Source of the DNA: Diadema antillarum
Taxonomy: Eukaryota
Length of the DNA: 64,000 bases
NCBI RefSeq assembly: GCF_040938485.1
Contig: NW_027271595.1
Coordinates: forward strand, 248,001 to 312,000
Direction: 5' to 3'
The notes below the pieces were generated by a model, which saw only the letters and a list, made by a program, of their open reading frames with translations, did no database searches and had not been told where the DNA came from. The translations under genes were made by a program, and so were the position numbers. Shown piece after piece: positions 1 through 55,260 of this stretch; position 1 is the stretch's first letter; each line of letters opens with the position of its first letter.

Positions 1-1768
1 GATACGTAGAAAACTCACAAAAGGAGACGGGATGAAGCTCGGGGACATTGGTGGCGTCACTCACGTGAACTCTCGTTCATCATTGATCGCCGATTTTCAA
101 ACATTCAAAGAATTTCAGATGTGCATCATTGCCTTATAGATACCGTTTTATACAAGTAAATAGTGTAATTTCCTTTGAAACGCAAGTCTGGCAGCTGAAA
201 ATCCTTTGTGATTTGATGGTTGTGCCTCTTTGTATCTTTCACATCCAATTTAGGCTGTTTAAGCCCTTTGTTACCGATATTCCTTGGAAAGGTATTTACT
301 CTCACATGGCGTTGCATCAAACAGAGGTTAAGGTGGAGTTCAGTTGGATAGTTGCCGAAGAGTCAGTGATGATGCTCGCTGACAGAAATCTGCTCCCGTT
401 TTACAAACATTTCTCACTAGCACAAAGGAGCAGATGATCTTATCATTAGGTTTCATCCGCGGTGACCTGGTTTCCGAGAAGATTTTCCTATAATATGAGG
501 GAACAAAACAAGACGAAACAAAGGCTCTCAAAACACCATAGATAAAAAATATGTATATTACACGTGATTCACTATTAGCAATGCAGCATTCTGACGAATG
601 TGATGTCAAGAATCTCTTTTGAGAAATTAGGTTGGTTTCATACGACGCCAAAATGCTCTTACATTATGAAAAGCTTTGTCGAAAAAGTTTTTTTAACACC
701 ATGCACCTTTCTGTTCAGATAGCAAGTCGCATGATAATACTTGTATCAGTTTATCTGGCATTTAATTTTAGTGATTATATAGGGATAATTCTATTGTATA
801 GTGCTTCCTACACTTAAAGCATCATCATCATCAGCAAAATCTATACTTCTTCATTGATTCTGTCTATTCAATATCTATGATACAGGTCTATATTTAAGAA
901 TAAAACGATTCTCTGCTAACACACTACATAGACATATACCGCCGCTTTTGATCAATTAGAAAACTGTGATAATAATAGACGATCTAACAATTTTATACAC
1001 TCTAAGAAAAAAAAAATCAATTCAACTTTGTGCCTTTACCAGTATCACAAATAAATAAGAATTGGACAATTACACATGACTTCGAGAAAGAGTAATATGA
1101 TCACGACCGCTGTCCTCACAGTTTCTCACTACTCTTTCATTGCTTTGTACATAACAGTAAATATCTTGCTCGGATTTAACGATTGGGAAAATCAAAACCC
1201 TTTTTGCGCAATCACTTTAACTTAAGGGCAATTTGATGCCAAGAGTACAGTTCTAATTATTGTCATCTGTTGAGATCATTATGCAATATGATATTAATCA
1301 TTATCAATTCAAACAAGTATTGTCACAAATGGCACGTTCGCCTTGAAGAGACTTTCCTGTAGTCAATAAAGAGTCCCGTTGTTTGTTTGACAAATAACGA
1401 GATCTACTACTTTGGAACAAATACAGTATACCATTTGCATAATGAATAGATCTGATGAGGTACAGAGTACAAACAGCGCAGTGCCGAAATAAAAAAATGC
1501 AGACCTAAAAAAAAAGATGGAGATCAGTGTTACACAAATATCAGCAACAACGCTTACGGGAACAAACTTTTCTGTAGACTGCCATGTTGAATGATTTGGA
1601 GACACGATGATAATTTCAGTCATAACTTTTCGTAAGATATTATGTCTATAGATTACTTTTTGATTTAGTTTGTTCAAGTTTTGCTGCAAATTGGTTGCTT
1701 TTGGTATATCTATTAATTGTATACCCACGAAAAAGACCCATCAAAAGATCGAAAGCTTGGCAGATCGA

Positions 1769-1812
<44 letters not shown>
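1769..1812. repeat. (AAT)n microsatellite
   Basis: Pure AAT run; it explains the poly-Ile ORF at 1695-1919. Confidence 0.95.
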
Positions 1813-1815
<3 letters not shown>

Positions 1816-2137
1816 TCATTTATAAAGTGCTTATTACAATGTTTCTAAGCGCTGAAGAAGAAATTGGAAAGATAGATTCAATTATGGAATACGTGTATAT
1901 ACAAATTGAGATACGATGAAACGCAATACAAGATACAAATACATAAAATAAACATTGTAAGTTATAACTTATAGAACGAACTAAGATATATACAGCTAGG
2001 ACAGCTTTTTGGCTTCTCCTGAATTAATTTTGCTTATGTGAGATATGAGAAAGAAAGGAGAAATCGGTGCGTAGCTTTGACACCATTATTCCTCTCACTG
2101 TTCCTCTTTTTCGGAAAAGTGCAAGAGTTGAAAAGTT

Positions 2138-2210
2138 GGTCTCCGCCGGGAATCGAGCCCGGGTCTTTGGCATGGAACGCCAACGCGTGAAACCGTTCGG
2201 CCACGGAGAC
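2138..2210 (-). tRNA. tRNA-Gly(TCC)-like gene or tRNA pseudogene/SINE head
   Basis: Minus strand reads GTCTCCG-TG-GCCGAACGGTTTCACGC-G-TTGGC-GTTCCAT-GCCAA-AGAC-CCGGG-CTCGATT-CCCGG-CGGAGAC-C, then ACTTTT. Acceptor (7 bp), anticodon (5 bp) and T (5 bp) stems are perfect and the anticodon is TCC. Defects: D-stem mismatch, G at position 32, C instead of T at position 54. Confidence 0.55.
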
Positions 2211-2423
2211 GTCATCGCGGTTCATGCACGCATGCAGACCCAAGCTCGATTACCCGATGGACCAACCTTTCAACCCTCTTATATGCGCATGTTCCTTTTG
2301 GGGGCAGAGAGTTATGAATAACAACAAGCCGCATGCCTCAGCTGGATCTTTGAAATGAGATTCACGTATCGGTGAACTAATTGGGATAATGTTTTGCGAA
2401 AGAAATCACCGCTATGCATATAC

Positions 2424-2457
<34 letters not shown>

Positions 2458-4101
2458 TTATAAGTATGTACATATCATGATATGCAATCAGGCATATACT
2501 TATTGAATTCAAATTTGGTTTATTTATATCAAAATAATATGACAAATAATATTCCCATAAAATCAAAATCATAATGAACTAAAATCATTGGTAATTCTCA
2601 TATCTAAATTTTTGTAAAGACTTTGATTAAACCATTGGCTGACCTGCTGTTGGAATTTTATTCTATATTTCTGAAAATCATTATCACTTTTGACAAACTT
2701 CCAGCGTCTAGCATTTATGTTCTATACCTTCTAGAAGCTTCATCACTGCAAATTTAGTAATGTCAGTTAGGTTAAAGAGGTAGAACAGGATGAAGGTTTA
2801 TAATCGAACGAATGAACCACCTAAAATATCCTTGCAAAGTACATCGTTGCAGTGTGTAAAATAGTGAATTGGCAAGACGACAACTCAAGAGCAGTTCTGT
2901 ACTTGCGTCAAAACTAGTGTCAACAGTGAATAATTACTGTCATTCTCTTTTATCTTTTGCCATGTTGCCGAACAAAATGTTGGCGTTATAGGCTATTTAC
3001 GTCAATTATGACGAACATCTGACACCATAAAAAACCACTAAAGTTGCTTGAGATACTGTAGTGTAAGCATGCTTATTTGTTCGGATATAGAAAATCCGAT
3101 TCATTCTATCCAAGACTTTCGTAAATTCAGGATTAGACCTTAATGAAGGCCTACTTTATTGTACTTGACAATCCCACCTTCCACATCACGCAAATTTTCT
3201 CCTTCGTTTCTGTTTTTTCTGCGAAAGTTCGATTCTTCCTATACCTCAAGTGTATTATACTCTTATTCCTGACGCACGAACATTAACAGAAACTTCGAAA
3301 TAATGAATCGACATTGGTGGTTCACTAATAACAAACGTGGATAAAAGAGGACTGTTTTCTTGACATCTCTTAGTAATAACTATTCACGTTGGAAGAATTA
3401 ATTGAAGGTGTTTGACGTAGATTTGTGTAAGTGCAAACAACTGTGGTAACCATGTATCGCTCTCATCTCTTGGTCAGTAATGAAGTTTGGACCCGGATTT
3501 GACCGAAGTGTTGCCCACGCAGTACGTCACAAACATGCGCATTATTGTGATAAATGTTTGTGTATGTGTGTGGTTTTTTCTTATGATCAATGTGACCATT
3601 CCACTGTTGTGTCGACGGGATTTTTCTGAATCCTAATAACAATGATCACTATGTAGACATAAAGGAAAACTCAACCAATGACTTCTTGGCAGACCATTGT
3701 GCCAGTGAAATCTATACGCATTTCTTTTTTTCCCCTTCAAATTACTGATATTGGCCAATCTTACAATGCAATAATAATGTTAACCCTGTGGAATACGGTC
3801 TTCGTCTCACAATGGGTATAAAGGGATGTAATAAGTTGTGACGTATTCAACTCACCAAATGAAAGAGGAATTAGGTTTTTCGGGTTTTTGTTCCCCGAAT
3901 CGATTCACTGACCCATACCTAGGTCAGCAGGGCTATGTTGTCACCTTCTTTGACCTCGTCGCCTATTACGTAAATCGCGCTGGACAAACGGCAACAAAGA
4001 AAGGGGGCAGCGATGTTAGTTTTGGGTCGCTCTGTTTATGTGAAAGATGACGGTAAACAGACAGTGAAAAGTTTCTTTGATTTTCCTTTCTCTGGCTAGA
4101 A

Positions 4102-4140
4102 TATAAATATGGCAGATTTGGACAAGTTTCTCCAGATTGC
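4102..4140 (+). promoter_or_regulatory. Core promoter of gene 1: TATA box plus Inr-like element
   Basis: TATAAATATGG at 4102 and TCCAGATT with the A 32 nt downstream; same sequence and spacing as in the other paralogs. Confidence 0.7.
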
Positions 4141-4292
4141 TCAAGAAGAGCACAACTTGACCTACCATCCCAGGAAGAGCACAAGAAGTTATCAACACTC
4201 AATCTCTGCGAGAAAGATTGATGTACAGAAGACCGTTTTGAAGAAACTTCCCTACTACTTCTACTGCACAACAGGCCAACAAAGCTACCACA

Positions 4293-4551
4293 ATGCGAGT
4301 TTGCACGTACGCAGTACTTGCGCTGATAGCCCTCCTTGTCCCCGCTACCCTCGGGGTCCCGATCGGCAGCGGCGTACTACAAAGAGACGCCAATCCGCAA
4401 AAAGATGAACCAATGGTAAGCGCCTTTTCTCCCATACTCTTTGCTTTTCTTTGGGGAGTGGCAAATATTCAGACGGACTAGCTGTGTTCAGGACAGGGTG
4501 ATCCCGACATTTCCTGTATAGATTCTAGAATCGAAGATATGAAGGACCGTT

Positions 4552-4597
<46 letters not shown>

Positions 4598-7500
4598 TGT
4601 GTCTGTGTGTCATTATTCTCCTGCTATCTAATCACTTCTTTTCATAGGAATGTTCATTCTTGTAAGGCTGCCATTGCCATCGATAGTTATAGGGGTTGTT
4701 TTGTTTGTCAATAATGTGTTGAAACACGCCAACAAAATACGAAAATAAAAATTTATTCATGTGGCATACCATGATTCATTGTCGACAGGAAACCCCTCCA
4801 CCTAAGAAAGAAGTGGATCTCTCCGTCTCCGAAGAGAAGCCGGTGTCATCCCACCAGGAGCCCAAAGATGAAGAAAATACTCCAGGATCTTTTCAGGGAG
4901 ACATGATGTTGACTGACGAACAGTTGAGGGAAGTCATGGAGGCTATCGATGAAGAGAAAGCTGGTCGCAAGAAGAGGAAGGCTGTATCGAACACTTTGAC
5001 CCGCTGGAATCAGAACATCGTGCCTTACGTCATCTCAGCTGCTTCAAGTAAGTCTTTCAAAATGGCGCTTAAAATCATACGAACAGTTTTGCAACTACGC
5101 ATATATTTACGTCTTACCAAATACATTGCCTTGGAATTAGCTAAGATAACAGGACTGTAGTGCAGATATTGTTTCTGTTGTCATTTGCGTTGGAGGGGTC
5201 AAATGTCTTTAACTATAAACATCGGCAATTTGAGACCAGAACCTTACAATAAACACCTGAATTACTCCTGAAACAAATTCTATGAACACAAAAACAATGA
5301 ACAAGCTTTTTCTTTTTTTACTCGAAAACGAAAGTATAAAACACTCTACCAAAACACTTATACATGAACAAAAAATGGGATGTTAATTTCACTCATAGCC
5401 TACTATTTATAGAATGATTTTCTGTTTATGCTAATAAACATGTATAGGTATGTAACTATACTAGTCTAGTACTTACAGATGAAATATTTCCTCAATTCTA
5501 TTCTTTTAGTTTCTCCCGTTAAACTTTTTTTTTTCGTTTGTCACTTTGATCTCATCTAAGATTTTCATTCCGAGTGAAATGGCTTATACTCTATAGCTAC
5601 TATACTTCAAATTACTTCAACATTTTTGTGTTCATCTATTTCAATTTCAATTCATTTTATTCCAACAACGCAATAAGATAGAGCATATCTATACAGTGAA
5701 AGTATGCTAGAAGTCACTAAAATCAGGACACATTAATAATGGATGCTTTTGTTTTAGGGGGTGACACGAGTGTGATCCGTTCTGCCATGGACCACTGGGA
5801 ACAGCACACCTGTTTGAGATTCGAACCTCGAACCTCCCAGCACGCCCGTCAACTCGGTCACGGTACCTACCTGAACTTCATCAGGGACGGTGGGTGCTGG
5901 TCCTATGTCGGAAGGGTGTTTTCGTCTTCACAAGACGTGTCCATCGGCAATGGGTGCGCTTATGTGAGTACACTTTGTTCACTTTCTTGAGAGAGAGAGA
6001 GAGAAAAAAAAGTACTTAAGTTTCATTTGTATAGCAGATTGGCCATTGAACAATGTTGTTTATCGAAATCTAAATCTAACTTAACGGAGGTGATAGACAA
6101 TAGACGCTAGTTTAGTGAGATGCAGCCAGTAGAAGTGAAAATGTTCTTAACATATCTGTTTTGACACAAACAATAGCTGTGAATGATCCATGCGTACATG
6201 TATAATGTGATAAATCGTAAGCTTCCTCTCATTTTATGATTGTCAACAACAGCTCGGCATCGTCGCCCACGAGATCGGACACGCCATCGGTTTTCATCAC
6301 GAACAGTCTCGCCCTGACAGGGACGACTACATCAGAGTCCACTTCGAAAACATCGAACGCGGATTGGAAGGCAACTTTGAGAAATATTCCTGGAGCGAAA
6401 TAACAACCAACAACGTCGAATACGACATCGGATCCCTCATGCACTATGGATCTCATGTGAGTGTTTTTGTCTGTACATTGTTAAAGCAAGTATTAAAAAA
6501 AAAACTCATTTCGGCTACTTGATATTCACTTCAAAATCACATTTTGCGCGACGAATCAATGAACAGGATATTTCATGAAAAGAGAAACGACAAGTCCTGT
6601 TTTAGATAGCGATTATGGGATTGGAACCTTTGCTGAACTTGAATCACTTTCAGATCAAATCTATGCAAACTAAAACTTAAAAACGCCCTTGCTCTTCTTC
6701 AAAGACAATATTAATGGTTAGGTAAATAATTCAACTATATAATACATGCTTGTGTATTTATGCATTCATTTATAGACACATTAGTAATTTAGGCCTACTT
6801 TCAAATTCAACATGTCTTAACAAAATGTGATCGTATAGGTGAGTGTGGGAGATGAAGAACTTCGCAAACAAAATACGCAAGCAAGCGCCTTGTATTGTAG
6901 TTAGGAGCAGCAACCTCCCTGATGTCAGTAAATGTTTATCTTGTACATACCATAAATATCTTATTTCTATCTGATTTTGATTTGATTTGATTGATCGCTT
7001 CTCAAATAGGGTTTCTCCCGCAATGGCCAGCCAACCATCACTACCATCGACCCGTTGCAGATGAGTCGCCTTGGAAACCGGGATTTCCTAAGCTTCGCTG
7101 ACATCAAACTTGCCAATCTCATCTACAACTGCAACGACGACTGTAGCAATAACCTGGCCTGCCAAAACGGCGGCTACCAGGGTCCCAACTGTGATTGCGT
7201 GTGTCCTCCAGGATTCAGCGGAGACCTGTGTGAGAACGATGACGGCCCGACGGAGCCCGAAGGATGTGTCTACAGACTGACCGATTCCGAGGGAGAGATC
7301 ATGTCACCAAACTATCCAAGCAACTATGACAATGAACAAAGTTGCCAGTACATGATCGAGGTAAAGCATCTCGAAATAACCGATTCCTTTTGCACTAATC
7401 TTGTTTCCAATACGAATATTTGGCCCTGTGATTTTTGTGGTTTTTTATGTGTAGATAATATCAACTATGTGCCGCTCATGTTAACCGTTGCCATGTTTCA

Positions 7501-8512
7501 ATTTTGATGTTATCATTTTATTACATGTCTCTACAGTGATCATTAGATATAAAAACTAGATCAAGACTGTAAAAAATTGAATTCACAATATTTTCATCCG
7601 TACACTTATTTTTCCAGGGAGCTCCAGGTTCTACGATCACACTCACCTTCGTCGACATGGACATCGAGCCTCACCGTACCTGCGCCTATGACTCCGTGGA
7701 GGTCCGCACTGGAGATGTTAGCTTACCCGGACAGAGGTTCTGTGGTGCTAACCTACCAGGTGATCAGGTGTCTACCGGGAACCAGCTACTGGTTTCCTTC
7801 ACCTCTGACTACAGCGTGACAGGGCGTGGCTTCAAGGCTACTTACGTCATCAACGGTGGCACCGTCACCAGCAGCCCTGTTGTTAGCACCACCAGCCCTG
7901 TTGTTAGTACCACCGACAGTCTTGAGGAGTTCGTGGGTACTTGTGGGGGAGACTTCACCGGGAACAGTGGGACGATGGCCTCTCCAAACTACCCAGACAA
8001 CTATGACAATAACTTGGAGTGCGTCTACACCATCGAGGTCGATTCTGGTCGTCGAGTCGCGCTCAGCTTCCACGATTTGCTGATTGAGGATCAGAGGAGA
8101 TGCGGCTGGGACTCTCTTGTGGTGGACCTTGGAGAAGGGATCAAGGTGCCTATGAAGTGAGTATCCAACATCTCGGGATCTATCGAAATATCTAACACTT
8201 TCGATATTGACATCAAATTGTCATGACAATACGATTCATGTATAAAGGTATATGATGAACATACTGCTTGACAGTTTTGTATATAGAACTAATTTAAAGA
8301 CATCAATATTTTGTAAGTCACATTGTAATATTGCACTCAGATATGTATGTAACGTTTGCTTCTTGATCGATTACGTTTTCAGGTTGTGTGGAGGTGACTA
8401 TCCAGCCGGTTACTTGATTTCACTCGACAACAAAATGGAGCTGACTCTGAAGACCGATAGGAGTGCGACGGAAAAAGGCTTCGCAGCAATCTACCGCGCC
8501 ATCGACCTGTAA
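4293..8512 (+). CDS. SPAN/BP10-like: Gene 1: BP10/SpAN-type astacin metalloprotease, 7 exons, 603 aa
   Basis: join(4293..4415,4789..5047,5758..5963,6253..6456,7010..7360,7618..8156,8383..8512) = 1812 nt, all introns GT-AG with consistent phases. Signal peptide MRVCTYAVLALIALL, prodomain FQGDM, furin site RKKR, zinc motif [19 protein letters not shown], Met-turn SLMHYG, EGF (CQNGGY...[12 protein letters not shown]), two CUB domains separated by a Thr/Ser-rich linker. This architecture is that of sea urchin BP10/SpAN. Confidence 0.95.
4554..4610. repeat. (TG)n microsatellite in intron 1 of gene 1
   Basis: Direct reading of the sequence. Confidence 0.95.
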
Positions 8513-8794
8513 GCAGAAGGTACCAAAGAAAGAATCAGTGTTTCTCGACTGGTCACAGTAATGCATTGACCCAAGGCAAATATGAAGGTACTGATCGAAG
8601 TGTAGTTCTTTGGTGTGTAGAATTAATTCCGCTATCCTAAGTTATCATTTTTTTTTTTCAATCAGATGTCTAGTCCGTAGATGCCTGGAATAAGTTTCGG
8701 TCTCCGAAGGTAAATTTGAATTGAATGATCGCTGTTGTAGTAAAAAATATCCGGAACTTTGTCAACATTTTGTTAAAGGGGAATTCCAGACAAT

Positions 8795-9238
8795 GTGATT
8801 TCAAATCCAAATTTTGCCATTTTTAGAACGTTCTATATGGATTTTTTTCTCTCTCTTTCGTATAGAATTTATTCAATTTGGGAGTGGATTTCCTCTTTAG
8901 GAGAGAAATACTGACAAGGACAGTAATGCTTCAAATACTCCGTCAAACAGGACCTAATGAGCATTATGTATTTTAAACTTTGTTTATTAACAGACAGTGC
9001 TTTCATCAGAATTTGGTGATTTCAAATCCAAATTTTGCCATTTTTAGAACGTTCTATATGGATTTTTTTCTCTCTCTTTCGTATAGAATTTATTCAATTT
9101 GGGAGTGGATTTCCTCTTTAGGAGAGAAATACTGACAAGGACAGTAATGCTTCAAATACTCCGTCAAACAGGACCTAATGAGCATTATGTATTTTAAACT
9201 TTGTTTATTAACAGACAGTGCTTTCATCAGAATTTGGT
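8795..9238 (+). repeat. 221-bp tandem duplication (2 copies)
   Basis: GTGATTTCAAATCC starts at 8795 and again at 9016; the two copies look identical by eye. Confidence 0.9.
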
Positions 9239-10039
9239 TTGCACCTAGAGCTGCGAAGATGTTAGAGTGAAATTTCTATTACAAGATACAATGTGAAGGG
9301 TTAATGGAAGACGTTCTTTTAATTTACCATCTAATGATGGGTCAAGCGAAAGAAATGTATCGTGCGTGCAGTGGTTAGATTTGCATGAAAAGACACTTAA
9401 TAAGTGACAAAGTACTAGGGTAGAACGCTATCAACTGAAACTAGATTTCTATTTGAATGGCGCTTCTGCCAAAAGAACTACACTCAGACAAAAGCAGGTG
9501 TCTGTAAGTTGTTGAATAATTGCAATGAATAGAAACATTTTTTATCCCAGGCTAGACTGACAAGGTATACTATAAAAGGGATACAGTTGATATACAGCAC
9601 GATATATAGCACAGTCATATCATAGACGTTGATTTCATAAGACCCAATACCATCTTCGTCTTAAGTCACAAACATTGAATTACCTTTTCCAAAACAATCT
9701 TTTCCAATATCTTTATCTTTATTTGGTTGATTTAATCATCTCATACTTTTATATCTTCATCTCTATCGCTCGATTACAACTACAAAGAAGTGGAATACAG
9801 TTCACAGTGATATTAATATTTCATTCGCTCAGTTTCTCTGTATTTCGTTCACTCAACGGCGTATCACAACAGTAATCAACAGCATAAAGATGCTACGTTA
9901 GAATCTGATGAAAGAGAATGTGCGTAGTTTCATTATTATCTTAAAAATCCTCTGCTGGCTGTCTTTATCTACAGTGTGTACAGTGCAGTTTGAATCAGTA
10001 TACCTCTGGGTATTTGAGTGTTGCCTTATAGATCCGTCC

Positions 10040-10620
10040 AAATTCTTGATAGTACAAGGTTTGTATCTTGCAATTCATGTATGTTATTGCAAAGTGCCAA
10101 TGCAAAAATTCTTGATAGTACAAGGTTTGTATCTTGACATTCATGTATGTTATTGCAAAGTGCCAATGCAAAAATTCTTGATAGTACAAGGTTTGTATCT
10201 TAACATTCATGTATGTTATTGCAAAGTGCCAATGCAAAAATTCTTGATAGTACAAGGTTTGTATCTTAACATTCATGTATGTTATTGCAAAGTGCCAATG
10301 CAAAAATTCTTGATAGTACAAGGTTTGTATCTTGACATTCATGTATGTTATTGCAAAGTGCCAATGCAAAAATTCTTGATAGTACAAGGTTTGTATCTTA
10401 ACATTCATGTATGTTATTGCAAAGTGCCAATGCAAAAATTCTTGATAGTACAAGGTTTGTATCTTAACATTCATGTATGTTATTGCAAAGTGCCAATGCA
10501 AAAATTCCTGATAGTACAAGGTTTGTATCTCGACATTCATGTATTTTATTGCAAAGTGCCAATGCAAAAATTCTTGATAGTACAAGGTTTGTATCTTGAC
10601 ATTCATGTATGTTATTGCAA
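10040..10620 (+). repeat. 66-bp minisatellite, about 8.8 copies
   Basis: Unit AAATTCTTGATAGTACAAGGTTTGTATCTT(G/A)ACATTCATGTATGTTATTGCAAAGTGCCAATGCAA; the period is seen from 10041 to 10107. Confidence 0.97.
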
Positions 10621-10692
10621 TCAATGCAATGTGCCAATGATTTTGACTGAAGTGCTTTTCTATTTTTGTAACGATACATGTATAGCGAGAAA

Positions 10693-10962
10693 TCCGTCTG
10701 GAACGGCAGGATCTCTATATAGTACTATATGTACTGGAAGAAATGTATCTTTTTTTTTTAGATTTTAAGCCATTTATGCGTTTGCTTTCTAGGTGACATG
10801 TAAACTTCAAACTTGAATGTTTAAACTTGTAACTCTTTAAATGATTTATTTCTAATTTCCTTCAGTGTGTTATTTGAATTATATACCTACAGAATTACTT
10901 ACTGATCTTTGTATCATATCTTACCATAGATGGTGTGTGGAATTTCCGTCTGGTACGGCTGG
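10693..10962 (+). promoter_or_regulatory. Pair of putative Smaug recognition element (SRE)-like hairpins in the gene 1 3'UTR
   Basis: CCGT-CTGGA-ACGG at about 10694-10706 and CCGT-CTGGT-ACGG at about 10946-10958: 4-bp stem with a CNGGN loop. The same motif occurs twice downstream of gene 2. Confidence 0.5.
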
Positions 10963-11019
10963 TTTATGATTCTTTATCTTGCTTTATATTTGAAAATGTT
11001 CGATTGATTCGACATGATC

Positions 11020-11025
11020 AATAAA
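11020..11025 (+). terminator. Candidate polyadenylation signal of gene 1
   Basis: First AATAAA I found downstream of the stop codon at 8512. Confidence 0.45.
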
Positions 11026-11598
11026 TCAAAATCGAATATCGTAAATATTTGTGTTTTTTTCTCTTCACTGTTGTGGTTAATAAGTATCTATTAAGAATGG
11101 TTGATGTGTTGTTCCTTACCATAATGGTGTATGTTTTATCGCAGATTATTTTTTTTTCTATTCCTCTAAATGGATATCTGTATTCGTATGTGTCGAGTAA
11201 AATAGCATATAACATTTCATTTGACTAAAAAAAACGTATGATGTTTTCTACGGCGTCCTACGAAATCAATCAATGACAAAACATTTCGTGGAAATAGAGG
11301 CCAAATGAGAGAATAAGAAATACTGAGAAGGAAAACTACCCAGAGATAGATAGATAGATAGGGAAAGAAAAAGAAAGAGAGAGAGAGAGGGGGGGGGGGC
11401 AGGGTATAAAAAAGAGACAAAGAAGACAAAAGTAATATGAGATGGATTGTAAGTAGGAGTGAGCCCTGCTCTGCAAATCTCTGTTCACTTCTCTCACAGT
11501 TAGAAAGAATTAAAGCACCTTTACTTTTTTTTTTAAATTAAACTGAATAAAATATTTTTGGTGTTGTCGTACGTTTGGGCAACATACCATGACCTTAA

Positions 11599-54554: not shown

Positions 54555-55260
54555 CCCCCCCCCACACACACACAAACACACACATTGCAAGCGACAAGTT
54601 TTCTACTGCGCAAGACAAAGCGATAATAACTCAGTACACATATCATGAATTATGGTAACATCCATGTAAAAGGACTTTAATTCATTTCAACTCGTTTCCA
54701 GCAGTCCACAGACGGACAAGTTATCATACACATCTTCGTCTTCGTATGCATGATATTAGTACATTAATAAATTACTAAAACTGATGCAGCTTTTCATCGT
54801 GAGGTCTTCTGCTGTTCTGCGTCTGATATGTGTGCTCTTCAGTCTCCTTAATTCTTTCTTCTATTCGAAGTCTACGCTGTCTCCTCTTGAACAATGTCAG
54901 TTGACTTCGTCGTGTCTCCCTTCTAGATAGATGTATCACAATTTGCTCTTGAAGAGTGATCTGAAGAAAACTGTTCAACCTAGCCATTTTCATACCTCGT
55001 CCCGATCAAGAGGCATAGTAGCCAATGTCTTCAGACCCTAACGTCTCCAGCCACAGCACTTGTCTCAAAGGCTATGTAGTCACTTATCTCTGTCTGGTGC
55101 GGTTCAAAAGAGAAGAAGCATTCCCAATCCTCTTTCATGAGATTTAGATGAAAGGTCTAAAAGGGTATTGATTCGGATTTACGCCGTGGTGTTGAACAAC
55201 AATAAACAATAAACGCACGGGGGAAAGAACACCCATTCTTTGACTGGGCTCAGATTTGTC
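54555..55260 (-). pseudogene. Hollowed BP10/SpAN paralog of gene 2 type: promoter, 5'UTR and ATG joined to the 3'UTR end
   Basis: 55260-54781 aligns with 23530-23066 (promoter, 5'UTR, ATG at 54797). The ATG is followed by an extra A (ATGAAAAGCTGCATC versus ATGAAAGCTGCATT) and gives a 13-codon ORF. 54730-54620 aligns with gene 2 3'UTR/flank 18430-18310. TATA is altered to TATGAAAATGG. Confidence 0.85.

What the first reader, a model, noticed from the sequence alone, without database searches (positions are those of the whole stretch)
10693..10962. Paired Smaug-type stem-loops conserved in otherwise unalignable 3'UTRs of genes 1 and 2
Seen: CCGT-CTGG(A/T)-ACGG occurs twice after gene 1 (about 10694 and 10946, plus strand) and twice after gene 2 (18712-18728 and 18582-18599, minus strand). 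All four are in the sense orientation and upstream of the first AATAAA, while the surrounding UTRs do not align by eye. As RNA this is a 4-bp stem closed by U-A with a CUGGN pentaloop. Established: Smaug/SAMD4/Vts1 SAM domains bind CNGG(N) stem-loops and recruit CCR4-NOT for repression and decay in early embryos; BP10/SpAN mRNAs are transient blastula transcripts. Gene 3 has a short predicted 3'UTR in which I did not see the motif. Inference: a Smaug-like decay timer acting on a zygotic patterning protease and differing between paralogs; I know of no description of this for these genes.
Basis: partly seen in the sequence, partly recalled or inferred. Interest (0 to 1): 0.75.

Follow-up and report, generated by a model that had tools for sequence, protein, structure and literature searches.

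The report
Conserved hairpin repeats in protease 3'UTRs
Two to six copies of a tiny, almost invariant RNA hairpin sit in the 3' untranslated regions of a family of early-embryo protease genes in at least three distant sea-urchin lineages, so it is very probably a real control element for these messages, but it is not proven to be a Smaug decay signal.

Summary
CCGTCTGGWACGG occurs four times in the window (0 expected by chance), always in sense, and is the only similarity between the 3' flanks of genes 1 and 2.

The window is Diadema antillarum. The same element, U-CCGUC-NGNN-ACGG-CUGG, recurs in other BP10-like 3'UTRs:
- further Diadema paralogs;
- Lytechinus pictus;
- a third, unidentified echinoid lineage;
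- seven intronless mRNA contigs, one ending in a poly(A) tail.

In total I found 43 copies in 14 UTRs, all in sense. None was found in window gene 3, its D. setosum orthologue, S. purpuratus SpAN or L. pictus SpAN-like.

Two thirds of the loops fit the Smaug consensus CNGGN with the yeast-type U-A closing pair, and the variable positions are exactly the N positions. One third carry conserved CNG(A/U/C)G loops, which fold as a 5-bp stem with a triloop and break that rule. Three features are unexplained by Smaug rules:
- the stem sequence hardly varies;
- a 3' CUGG tail is conserved;
- the last copy usually sits 18-36 nt before the poly(A) signal.

Verdict: a real, ancient, family-specific 3'UTR hairpin. 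Smaug-type reading is plausible but untested, and the direction of the effect is unknown. The scan also noted these hairpins just beyond this window's end (s1-225699).

The parts
10693..10712 (+). Gene 1, copy a: U-CCGU-CUGGA-ACGG-CAGGAU. The hairpin core is 10694-10706.
   Evidence: covariance model 32.6 bits
10945..10964 (+). Gene 1, copy b: U-CCGU-CUGGU-ACGG-CUGGUU. The core is 10946-10958, 74 nt (start to start) before the AATAAA at 11020.
18710..18729 (-). Gene 2, copy a: A-CCGU-CUGGA-ACGG-CUGGAU. The core is 18716-18728. An ATTAAA lies at 18736-18741, 13 nt upstream.
   Evidence: 41.4 bits
18580..18599 (-). Gene 2, copy b: U-CCGU-CUGGA-ACGG-CUGGAU. The core is 18586-18598.
18397..18414 (-). 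Gene 2, copy c, degenerate: CCGUC-UGU-GACGA-CUGG. It is a triloop variant with a C.A mismatch at the stem base, 34 nt before AATAAA.
   Evidence: (29.8 bits)
54698..54715 (-). Decayed copy, CCGUCUGUGGACUGCUGG, in the gutted fifth paralogue. It is homologous to gene 2 copy c plus its poly(A) region.
   Evidence: (15.9 bits)
8513..11045 (+). Presumed 3'UTR of gene 1 (P0162), about 2.5 kb. It holds a 223-bp tandem duplication and a 66-bp x ~9 array. It has no poly(A) hexamer on the sense strand until 11020 (0 against 4.8 expected).
18355..19532 (-). Presumed 3'UTR of gene 2, about 1.15 kb, ending after the AATAAA at 18374-18379.
11020..11025 (+). AATAAA, the first and only poly(A) hexamer after the gene 1 stop codon.
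18374..18379 (-). AATAAA of gene 2.

Best explanation
Shown:
- The motif is one member of an ancient, multi-copy RNA hairpin element in the 3'UTRs of BP10-like astacin protease mRNAs of euechinoid sea urchins.
- Its core is a 4-bp stem (CCGU/ACGG) with a 5-nt loop C-N-G-N-N, preceded by U and followed by CUGG.
- Each UTR carries 1-6 copies.
- The 5' copies carry CNGG(A/U) pentaloops.
- The last copy usually lies 18-36 nt before the poly(A) hexamer.

Inferred: the pentaloop copies, which include all four copies in this finding, are read by a SAM-domain hairpin reader of the Smaug/SAMD4 type. Such readers act on the poly(A) tail through CCR4-NOT, so these copies would set the lifetime and translation of the paralogues that carry them. 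The paralogues without the element (window gene 3, the SpAN/BP10 subclade) would escape this control. The triloop-type copies and the CUGG tail probably add a second contact or a second reader.

The 0.38 confidence applies to the Smaug-type repression or decay reading. I put the underlying claim, a selected RNA-level cis-element in the mature mRNA, at about 0.85.
For: Excess over chance. Four exact copies against 0 expected. The general pattern gives 6 against 0.13 expected in the window and 6 against 0.09 in L001.

Islands of conservation. BLAST between the 3'UTRs of window genes 1 and 2 and of L001 genes A and B finds essentially only the ~20-nt element.

Depth of conservation. There are 43 copies in 14 UTRs, all in sense:
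- D. antillarum: window genes 1 and 2, and L009 genes X and Y;
- L. pictus: L005;
- the unidentified L001 lineage;
- mRNA contigs L003, L004, L131, L047, L079, L098 and L063.
The protein trees place these in three deep echinoid lineages.

Mature mRNA.
- L003, L004, L131 and L079 have uninterrupted coding sequences, whereas the genomic genes have introns.
- L098 ends in a poly(A) run about 25 nt after the ATTAAA that follows its last copy.
- In gene 1 the sense strand between stop codon and 11020 has 0 poly(A) hexamers against 4.8 expected (P about 0.01). The antisense strand has 9 and the next 2.5 kb has 8.

Hairpin.
- 98.8% of stem cells pair.
- Pair 3-11 shows GC 36, AU 5, GU 2.
- A competing fold that uses the CUGG tail is no better than shuffles.

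Fit to the Smaug element.
- 29 of 43 loops are CNGGN.
- The low-information columns of the 18-nt block include loop positions 2 and 5, the N positions of the SRE.
- The closing pair is u-a, as in the yeast SRE uCUGGCa (PMC2275152).
- CUGG and 5-nt loops are the best-performing SRE variants (PMC4053848).
- A simple scan for generic SRE-type hairpins found them almost only at these elements, and none in the SpAN-clade UTRs, the L006 mRNA or window gene 3's UTR.
Against: - No binding, expression or stability data exist for any of these mRNAs, and no RNA run was listed for this genome.
- 14 of 43 copies have A, U or C at loop position 4, which is invariant G in the SRE. They are conserved in three lineages and are not decayed copies.
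- SRE stems are described as non-specific, yet two of the four stem pairs never vary in 43 copies and the CUGG tail is 84-91% conserved.
- The predicted probability of the hairpin in its native context is very variable (0.00-0.96, mean 0.40). The strict open-pentaloop form is no better with native than with shuffled flanks.
- Covariation rests on essentially one double change and two wobbles.
- The best-studied transient genes of the family (S. purpuratus SpAN, L. pictus SpAN-like) lack the element, so it cannot be the general reason for transient expression.
- I did not verify that sea urchins express a Smaug/SAMD4 orthologue. The held literature has nothing on it.
Confidence: 0.38

Rival explanations
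1. A dedicated, still unknown RNA-binding factor reads the whole 17-18-nt element: stem sequence, C and G of the loop, and the CUGG tail. The resemblance to the Smaug element is partial or coincidental. Because the last copy is tied to the poly(A) hexamer, the element may help to define the poly(A) site or control the tail.
For: - Stem pairs 2 and 4 are invariant in 43 copies, pair 1 is kept in 41 of 43, and the CUGG tail is 84-91% conserved. This is more than a shape-only reader needs.
- Both loop classes share C1 and G3, and C1 always has a G partner. When position 4 is not G, position 5 is G in 14 of 14 copies (Fisher 4e-8, not corrected for phylogeny).
- The last copy starts 18-36 nt before A(A/U)UAAA in 9 of 10 complete UTRs.
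- In L098 five earlier hexamers are read through, and the one used is the hexamer right after the last copy.
Against: - No candidate protein is known.
- The internal copies are not next to poly(A) hexamers.
- High sequence identity may partly reflect common descent of the copies plus the fragility of a 4-bp stem.
- The copies with the CCAU/AUGG stem lack the CUGG tail.
Confidence: 0.3
2. The CNGGN pentaloops recruit a ZCCHC14-like SAM protein with a TENT4 non-canonical poly(A) polymerase. This lengthens or guards the tail, so the element stabilises these mRNAs instead of destroying them.
For: - ZCCHC14 binds short stem-loops with Smaug-type pentaloops, including a CUGGA loop identical to three of the window's copies, and recruits TENT4. 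TENT4 counteracts CCR4-NOT deadenylation (PMC9282228).
- The position close to the 3' end suits a tail-directed enzyme.
Against: - The system is known only from mammalian cells and viral RNAs.
- I did not check for echinoderm orthologues.
- It has the same problems as the Smaug reading with the triloop copies and with stem and tail conservation.
Confidence: 0.12
3. The element is a Roquin-type decay hairpin (constitutive decay element). The triloop copies are the active form and the pentaloop copies are relatives.
For: - 14 copies fold as a 5-bp stem with a C-G closing pair and a UGA, UGU, UGC or CGA triloop. These fit the relaxed YRN triloop rule.
- UGU with a C-G closing pair is the form in all solved Roquin complexes (PMC6294493).
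- Tandem elements are needed for strong Roquin effects in UCP3.
Against: - The four copies of this finding are pentaloops. Turning a CDE into a pentaloop abolishes its function (PMC6294493).
- The stem is 5 bp, below the 6-8 bp consensus and already weaker in reporters.
- The stem sequence is conserved, whereas Roquin shows no stem-sequence preference.
Confidence: 0.07
4. The motif is not an RNA signal. It acts as DNA (a palindromic protein site in a 3' enhancer or terminator), or it is a remnant of a repeat or of gene conversion with no function.
For: - The core is an inverted repeat, and CCGTCTGAGACGG is a perfect palindrome.
- The orientation argument is weak, because copies inherit their orientation by descent.
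- Thermodynamic support for the hairpin is modest.
Against: - The element is conserved as ~20-nt islands in otherwise unalignable UTRs across three deep lineages.
- It lies inside polyadenylated mRNA.
- A G-C to A-U double change keeps the pairing.
- No copy lies outside BP10-like 3' flanks in the 64-kb window or in the ~115 kb of other echinoid loci scanned with the model.
- The AT-rich hits of the metagenome scan were BP10-like messages, plus one UTR fragment that resembles them around the element.
- Gene conversion cannot explain the match between Diadema and Lytechinus.
Confidence: 0.05

Closest known systems
Smaug recognition element (SRE) of Drosophila nanos/Hsp83 and yeast Vts1p targets
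   Same: - A short hairpin with a CNGGN pentaloop.
- The closing pair is u-a, as in the structurally solved yeast SRE uCUGGCa.
- Loop positions 2 and 5 are free.
- Several copies occur per mRNA.
- The setting is the 3'UTR of an early-embryo mRNA.
   Different: - The stem sequence is nearly invariant, and a 3' CUGG tail is conserved.
- One third of the copies have a non-G at loop position 4 and fold as triloops.
- The last copy is tied to the poly(A) hexamer.
- The host genes are presumed zygotic rather than maternal.
- No binding or function has been shown.
ZCCHC14-TENT4 binding stem-loops (HBV PRE SL-alpha, HCMV RNA2.7, HAV stem-loop Vb)
   Same: - A CNGGN pentaloop on a short stem. HAV Vb has CUGGA, identical to three window copies.
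- The HBV element lies in the 3' region of the viral transcripts, and TENT4 acts on the poly(A) tail.
   Different: - These are viral RNAs in mammalian cells with a stabilising outcome.
- No CUGG tail and no triloop variants are described for them.
Roquin constitutive decay element (CDE)
   Same: - The triloop copies (CCGUC-UGW-GACGG, CCAUC-UGY-GAUGG) have a YRN triloop on a C-G closing pair.
- They occur in tandem in a 3'UTR.
   Different: - The stem is only 5 bp.
- The majority of copies, including all four of this finding, are pentaloops.
- The stem sequence is conserved.

Membership tests
Smaug recognition element (SRE) | The hairpin loop begins with CNGG, followed by 0-3 further loop bases. 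| tested here: met
   All four window copies qualify: CUGGA three times and CUGGU once. Family-wide, 29 of 43 copies meet the rule and 14 of 43 do not.
Smaug recognition element (SRE) | The loop sits on a base-paired stem of any sequence. | tested here: met
   The stem is the 4-bp CCGU/ACGG, and 98.8% of stem cells pair across 43 copies. The u-a closing pair matches the yeast SRE uCUGGCa (PMC2275152).
Smaug recognition element (SRE) | The hairpin is predicted to form in its native context, as in the Chen et al. scoring. | tested here: inconclusive
   The probability of the 4-bp stem is 0.00-0.96 (mean 0.40). The four exact window copies score 0.16, 0.12, 0.36 and 0.00. The strict open-pentaloop form is no better with native than with shuffled flanks.
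Smaug recognition element (SRE) | The element lies in the mature mRNA. | tested here: inconclusive
   Met in relatives: intronless mRNA contigs L003, L004, L131 and L079, and the poly(A)-tailed L098. For the window's own genes the evidence is indirect only: depletion of poly(A) hexamers. No RNA run was listed.
Smaug recognition element (SRE) | The element is bound by a Smaug/SAMD4/Vts1 SAM domain and confers repression or decay. | not testable with these tools
   This needs binding and reporter experiments. The held literature has nothing on sea-urchin Smaug.
ZCCHC14-TENT4 target stem-loop | A CNGGN pentaloop on a short stem. | tested here: met
   The loop class is the same. CUGGA is the HAV stem-loop Vb loop (PMC9282228).
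ZCCHC14-TENT4 target stem-loop | ZCCHC14 binding and TENT4-dependent tail protection. | not testable with these tools
   No echinoderm data are available, and I did not search for orthologues.
Roquin constitutive decay element | A YRN triloop. | tested here: not met
   The four copies of the finding are pentaloops whose first and last loop bases (C and A/U) cannot pair. The rule is met only by the 14 variant copies, including the degenerate window copy at 18397-18414.
Roquin constitutive decay element | A stem of 6-8 bp. | tested here: not met
   The stem is at most 5 bp, and the flanks give no extended helix (mean z +0.24 against shuffled flanks). The consensus is taken from PMC6294493.
Dispersed repeat or transposon fragment | Copies scattered outside the 3' flanks of this gene family, on both strands. 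| tested here: not met
   - The covariance-model scan of the window plus about 115 kb of other echinoid loci finds no credible copy elsewhere.
- The AT-rich hits of the metagenome scan were BP10-like messages, plus one UTR fragment that resembles them around the element.
Known Rfam RNA family | A match to a curated covariance model. | tested here: not met
   No Rfam hit lies at any copy in window 8400-19700, even at E up to 1.

The most novel reading that the evidence does not exclude
This would be an echinoid-specific, bipartite 3'UTR element: a fixed-sequence hairpin plus a CUGG tail. It exists in two interconvertible loop forms, a Smaug-like pentaloop and a Roquin-like triloop in which loop base C1 always keeps a G partner. 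It is arrayed with a fixed polarity, pentaloops first and a triloop-type copy at the poly(A) signal. A dedicated reader, or two cooperating readers, would use it to define the poly(A) site or tail and so time the expression of an early zygotic protease family. The element would have been kept for roughly 200 million years and lost whenever a paralogue changed its role.
Probability: 0.3. Interest if true: 0.75.

Novelty: new variant of a known kind. Interest (0 to 1): 0.6.

Why it matters
Post-transcriptional control of zygotic patterning genes in sea urchins is poorly mapped, and I found no description of a Smaug-type element in echinoderms in the held literature.

This element is short and sharply defined. 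It is deeply conserved, present in several copies, and present or absent between neighbouring paralogues. It occurs in Lytechinus, where mRNA injection and knock-downs are routine. That makes it a directly testable handle on three questions:
- how the lifetime or poly(A) tail of early-embryo mRNAs is set;
- whether SAM-domain hairpin readers (Smaug/SAMD4, ZCCHC14) have conserved developmental targets outside insects and mammals;
- how a pentaloop and a triloop version of one hairpin can coexist under selection.

Tried and rejected
- RNA evidence in this genome. The look-up of sequencing runs on window 8513-11060 listed no run, so read laying could not be used.
- Word search with the CUB exon. 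It reached only short fragments, but one of them, P0001, led to L001.
- The big representative search. It was swamped by multi-CUB proteins, and only P0095 was useful.
- Alternative fold pairing the 5' half of the core with the CUGG tail. It shows 86% pairing, no better than shuffles, and is broken by the A-U variant. Rejected.
- Extended lower helix from the flanks. No signal: mean z +0.24, and 0 of 39 copies below -1.64. Rejected.
- Native flanks favouring the hairpin. Not seen.
- Rfam. The only hits in the region are weak microsatellite-like miRNA matches away from the copies.
- miRNA seed idea, from memory only. UCCGUC is an offset 6-mer for a miR-184-type seed. I set it aside because the base before the core is not constant and because the pattern of free positions fits a hairpin, not a linear site. 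It was not tested.
- Literature search for the 13-mers. It found only unrelated mouse PCR primers.
- Generic SRE-like hairpins in the UTRs that lack the element (SpAN, SpAN-like, L006, gene 3). None was found.
It supports family specificity but does not prove it.

Full report
**What is in the window**

The 13-mer CCGTCTGGWACGG occurs exactly four times: at 10694 and 10946 on the plus strand, and at 18716-18728 and 18586-18598 on the minus strand. None is expected in 100 dinucleotide shuffles. It is CCGTCTGGWACGGCWGG, usually preceded by T. A fifth, degenerate copy (CCGTCTGTGACGACTGG) lies at 18397-18413 (minus).

BLAST between the paralogues places the stop codons at 8510-8512 (gene 1, plus) and 19533-19535 (gene 2, minus). 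Downstream of the stops the motif is the only similarity between the two genes. All copies are in sense.

Gene 1's copies lie 2.2-2.4 kb after the stop. No AATAAA or ATTAAA occurs on the sense strand before 11020, against 4.8 expected (P about 0.01). The antisense strand of the same stretch has 9, and the next 2.5 kb has 8. Gene 2 has an ATTAAA 13 nt before its first copy and its AATAAA at 18379.

Gene 3's 3' flank has no copy.

**Where the window comes from**

The window is Diadema antillarum, assembly GCA_040938485.1, contig JBFRCO010000707.1. L008 matches window 1-15512 at 100%. Gene 1 encodes P0162.

**Related sequences**

I reached full-length relatives in three steps:
- The CUB exon gave P0001 and a 58-kb ENA contig, L001.
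- The representative search gave P0095.
- The word search with P0095 gave named echinoid proteins.

Their loci show the same element in sense between stop codon and poly(A) signal:
- L001, an unidentified echinoid whose exons are 70-77% identical to the window: two tandem genes with three copies each.
- L. pictus 'BP10-like', L005: three copies, plus a second set of three 2 kb downstream with its own poly(A) hexamer.
- D. antillarum contig 1325, L009: genes X and Y with two copies each. Gene X is 98% identical to the end of the window.
- Intronless mRNA contigs L003, L004 and L131.

An exact-pattern scan of the metagenome collection returned mostly GC-rich bacterial chance hits. The AT-rich hits were L004 again plus four new contigs:
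- L079, a near full-length BP10-like message;
- L047 and L098, the 3' ends of BP10-like messages with their UTRs;
- L063, a UTR fragment that resembles L098 around the element.

L098 ends in a poly(A) run about 25 nt after the ATTAAA that directly follows its last copy. In relatives, therefore, the element lies in spliced, polyadenylated mRNA. For the window's own genes this could not be tested, because no sequencing run was listed.

**Where the element is absent**

A covariance model built from 25 copies (R1) was run over the window and all echinoid loci. It found nothing else except a decayed copy in the gutted fifth paralogue at 54698-54715. That copy is homologous to gene 2's third copy plus its poly(A) region. 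The model found no copy in:
- window gene 3;
- its D. setosum orthologue L007;
- the related D. antillarum paralogue L132;
- S. purpuratus SpAN (L002);
- L. pictus SpAN-like (L130);
- the mRNA L006.

The protein trees place the carriers in three deep lineages: Diadema, the camarodont 'BP10-like' genes, and the L001/L079 group. The non-carriers fall in a derived, long-branched SpAN/BP10 subclade, in the Diadema gene 3 lineage, and on the separate, unresolved L006 branch. The simplest history is an ancestral element with later losses. By published echinoid timetrees the Diadema-camarodont split is of the order of 200 million years. That figure is from my own knowledge and was not checked here.

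**Anatomy of the family (43 copies, alignment A2)**

The informative block runs from the U before the core to the second G of the tail: U CCGUC N G N N ACGG CUGG. Flanks on both sides carry almost no information.

The 4-bp stem pairs in 98.8% of cells. Pairs 2 and 4 never vary. Pair 3 is G-C in 36 copies, A-U in 5 and G-U in 2. So there is one clear compensatory change, shared by related copies, and two wobbles. Covariation support is therefore real but thin. A competing fold that uses the CUGG tail is no better than shuffles and is broken by the A-U variant. There is no extended lower helix.

The loops fall into two classes:
- 29 copies are CNGGN: CAGGA 13, CUGGA 6, CUGGG 4, CUGGU 3, CAGGU 2, CUGGC 1.
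- 14 copies are CNG(A/U/C)G: CUGAG 6, CUGUG 4, CUGCG 2, CCGAG 2.

Whenever position 4 is not G, position 5 is G (14 of 14, against 4 of 29 otherwise; Fisher 4e-8, not corrected for shared descent). So the first loop C always has a G partner. The second class folds as a 5-bp stem with a UGN or CGA triloop.

The arrangement is polar. Pentaloop copies come first. The variant copies lie downstream of a pentaloop copy, in the middle or last position. In the L001 group these variants are a CCAUC-UGY-GAUGG copy and a final CCGUC-YGAG-ACGG-CUGGAAUUAAA copy fused to the poly(A) signal. The last copy starts 18-36 nt before A(A/U)UAAA in 9 of 10 complete UTRs, and 74 nt before it in gene 1.

Thermodynamic prediction is lukewarm. 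The stem's probability in native context ranges from 0.00 to 0.96 (mean 0.40). The strict open-pentaloop form is no better with native than with shuffled flanks.

**Comparison with known systems**

*Smaug element.* It is defined as a CNGGN0-3 loop on a non-specific stem. CUGG and 5-nt loops perform best, and the protein contacts the loop and the 5' stem (PMC4053848). The solved yeast element is uCUGGCa, with a C1-G4 pair in the loop and the fifth base bulged out (PMC2275152). The four window copies (u-CUGGA/U-a) match this precisely. Across the family the low-information positions of the block include the two N positions of the SRE. A scan for generic SRE-type hairpins finds them in these UTRs almost only at these elements, and finds none in the SpAN-clade UTRs, the L006 mRNA or window gene 3's UTR. 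These points favour a SAM-domain reader.

*Against a plain SRE.* One third of the copies are conserved non-CNGG variants. The stem sequence hardly varies. The CUGG tail is conserved. The last copy is coupled to the poly(A) site.

*ZCCHC14-TENT4.* The same pentaloop class, including CUGGA itself, is bound by ZCCHC14. That protein recruits TENT4 and protects tails from CCR4-NOT (PMC9282228). The sign of the effect is therefore open.

*Roquin.* The triloop copies resemble Roquin decay elements: a YRN triloop, with UGU on a C-G closing pair in all solved complexes. However, their stem is 5 bp against a consensus of 6-8, and converting such an element into a pentaloop inactivates it (PMC6294493). 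Roquin therefore cannot account for the copies of this finding.

*Databases and literature.* Rfam has no match. The held literature has no mention of these sequences or of Smaug in sea urchins.

**Judgement**

The following is well supported (about 0.85): this is a selected, RNA-level cis-element of the mature mRNA. It is specific, as far as I could search, to BP10-like protease messages, and it has been gained or lost between neighbouring paralogues.

That mechanism is a Smaug-type reader recruiting deadenylation as a decay timer. It is untested, and I give it about 0.38. The rivals are a dedicated reader of the whole element (0.30), a ZCCHC14/TENT4-type stabiliser (0.12), Roquin (0.07), and a DNA-level or non-functional origin (0.05).

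It therefore cannot be the general cause of transient BP10/SpAN expression. The carriers are the 'BP10-like' paralogues and most, but not all, of the Diadema co-orthologues examined.

**Earlier notes of the scan**

- s1-225699 reports paired SRE-like hairpins in three protease 3'UTRs starting 3.2 kb beyond this window's end. This agrees with L009 genes X and Y, which look like the other haplotype of that stretch.
- s1-229796 (the gutted fifth paralogue) led me to check 54.6-55.0 kb, where a decayed copy sits.
- s1-230008 (the four-gene cluster) agrees with my BLAST map.

Noticed in passing
window 8795-9238 and 10040-10625: Gene 1's presumed 3'UTR holds a perfect 223-bp tandem duplication and an array of about nine 66-bp units. 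These account for most of its extra length (2.5 kb, against 0.7-1.2 kb in the paralogues).
   Followed up: partly
window 54698-54715 (-), context 54560-55000: The gutted fifth paralogue keeps a decayed copy of the hairpin plus a poly(A)-signal region. Both are homologous to gene 2's third copy.
   Followed up: partly
L005:12976-13360: L. pictus has a second set of three hairpins with its own poly(A) hexamer, 2 kb beyond the first poly(A) site of the BP10-like gene. It may be the orphaned 3'UTR of a lost paralogue or part of a long UTR isoform.
   Followed up: no
L001:13858-20570: Downstream of the protease genes, the unidentified echinoid contig carries a cluster of genes typical of a Polinton/Maverick-like element: double jelly-roll capsid, rve integrase, and a faint Pox_A32-type ATPase hit.
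   Followed up: no
L001:1-40 and 11100-11125: A perfect palindrome, GTCACCATGGTGAC, lies about 25-40 nt after the stop codon of L001 gene B. A near-identical copy (ATCACCATGGTGAC) lies at the matching place after gene A, at the very start of L001. It is one of the few other conserved islands between the two UTRs.
   Followed up: no
L005 and L130 (L. pictus CM073230.1, 12.79-12.83 Mb): The hairpin-bearing BP10-like gene and the hairpin-free SpAN-like gene are immediate neighbours in head-to-head orientation. The two regulatory states therefore coexist within one cluster.
   Followed up: partly
window 18736-18741 (-): An ATTAAA followed by an A-run lies 13 nt upstream of gene 2's first hairpin. 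If it is used, a short isoform would end within or just after that hairpin and would lack the other copies.
   Followed up: no
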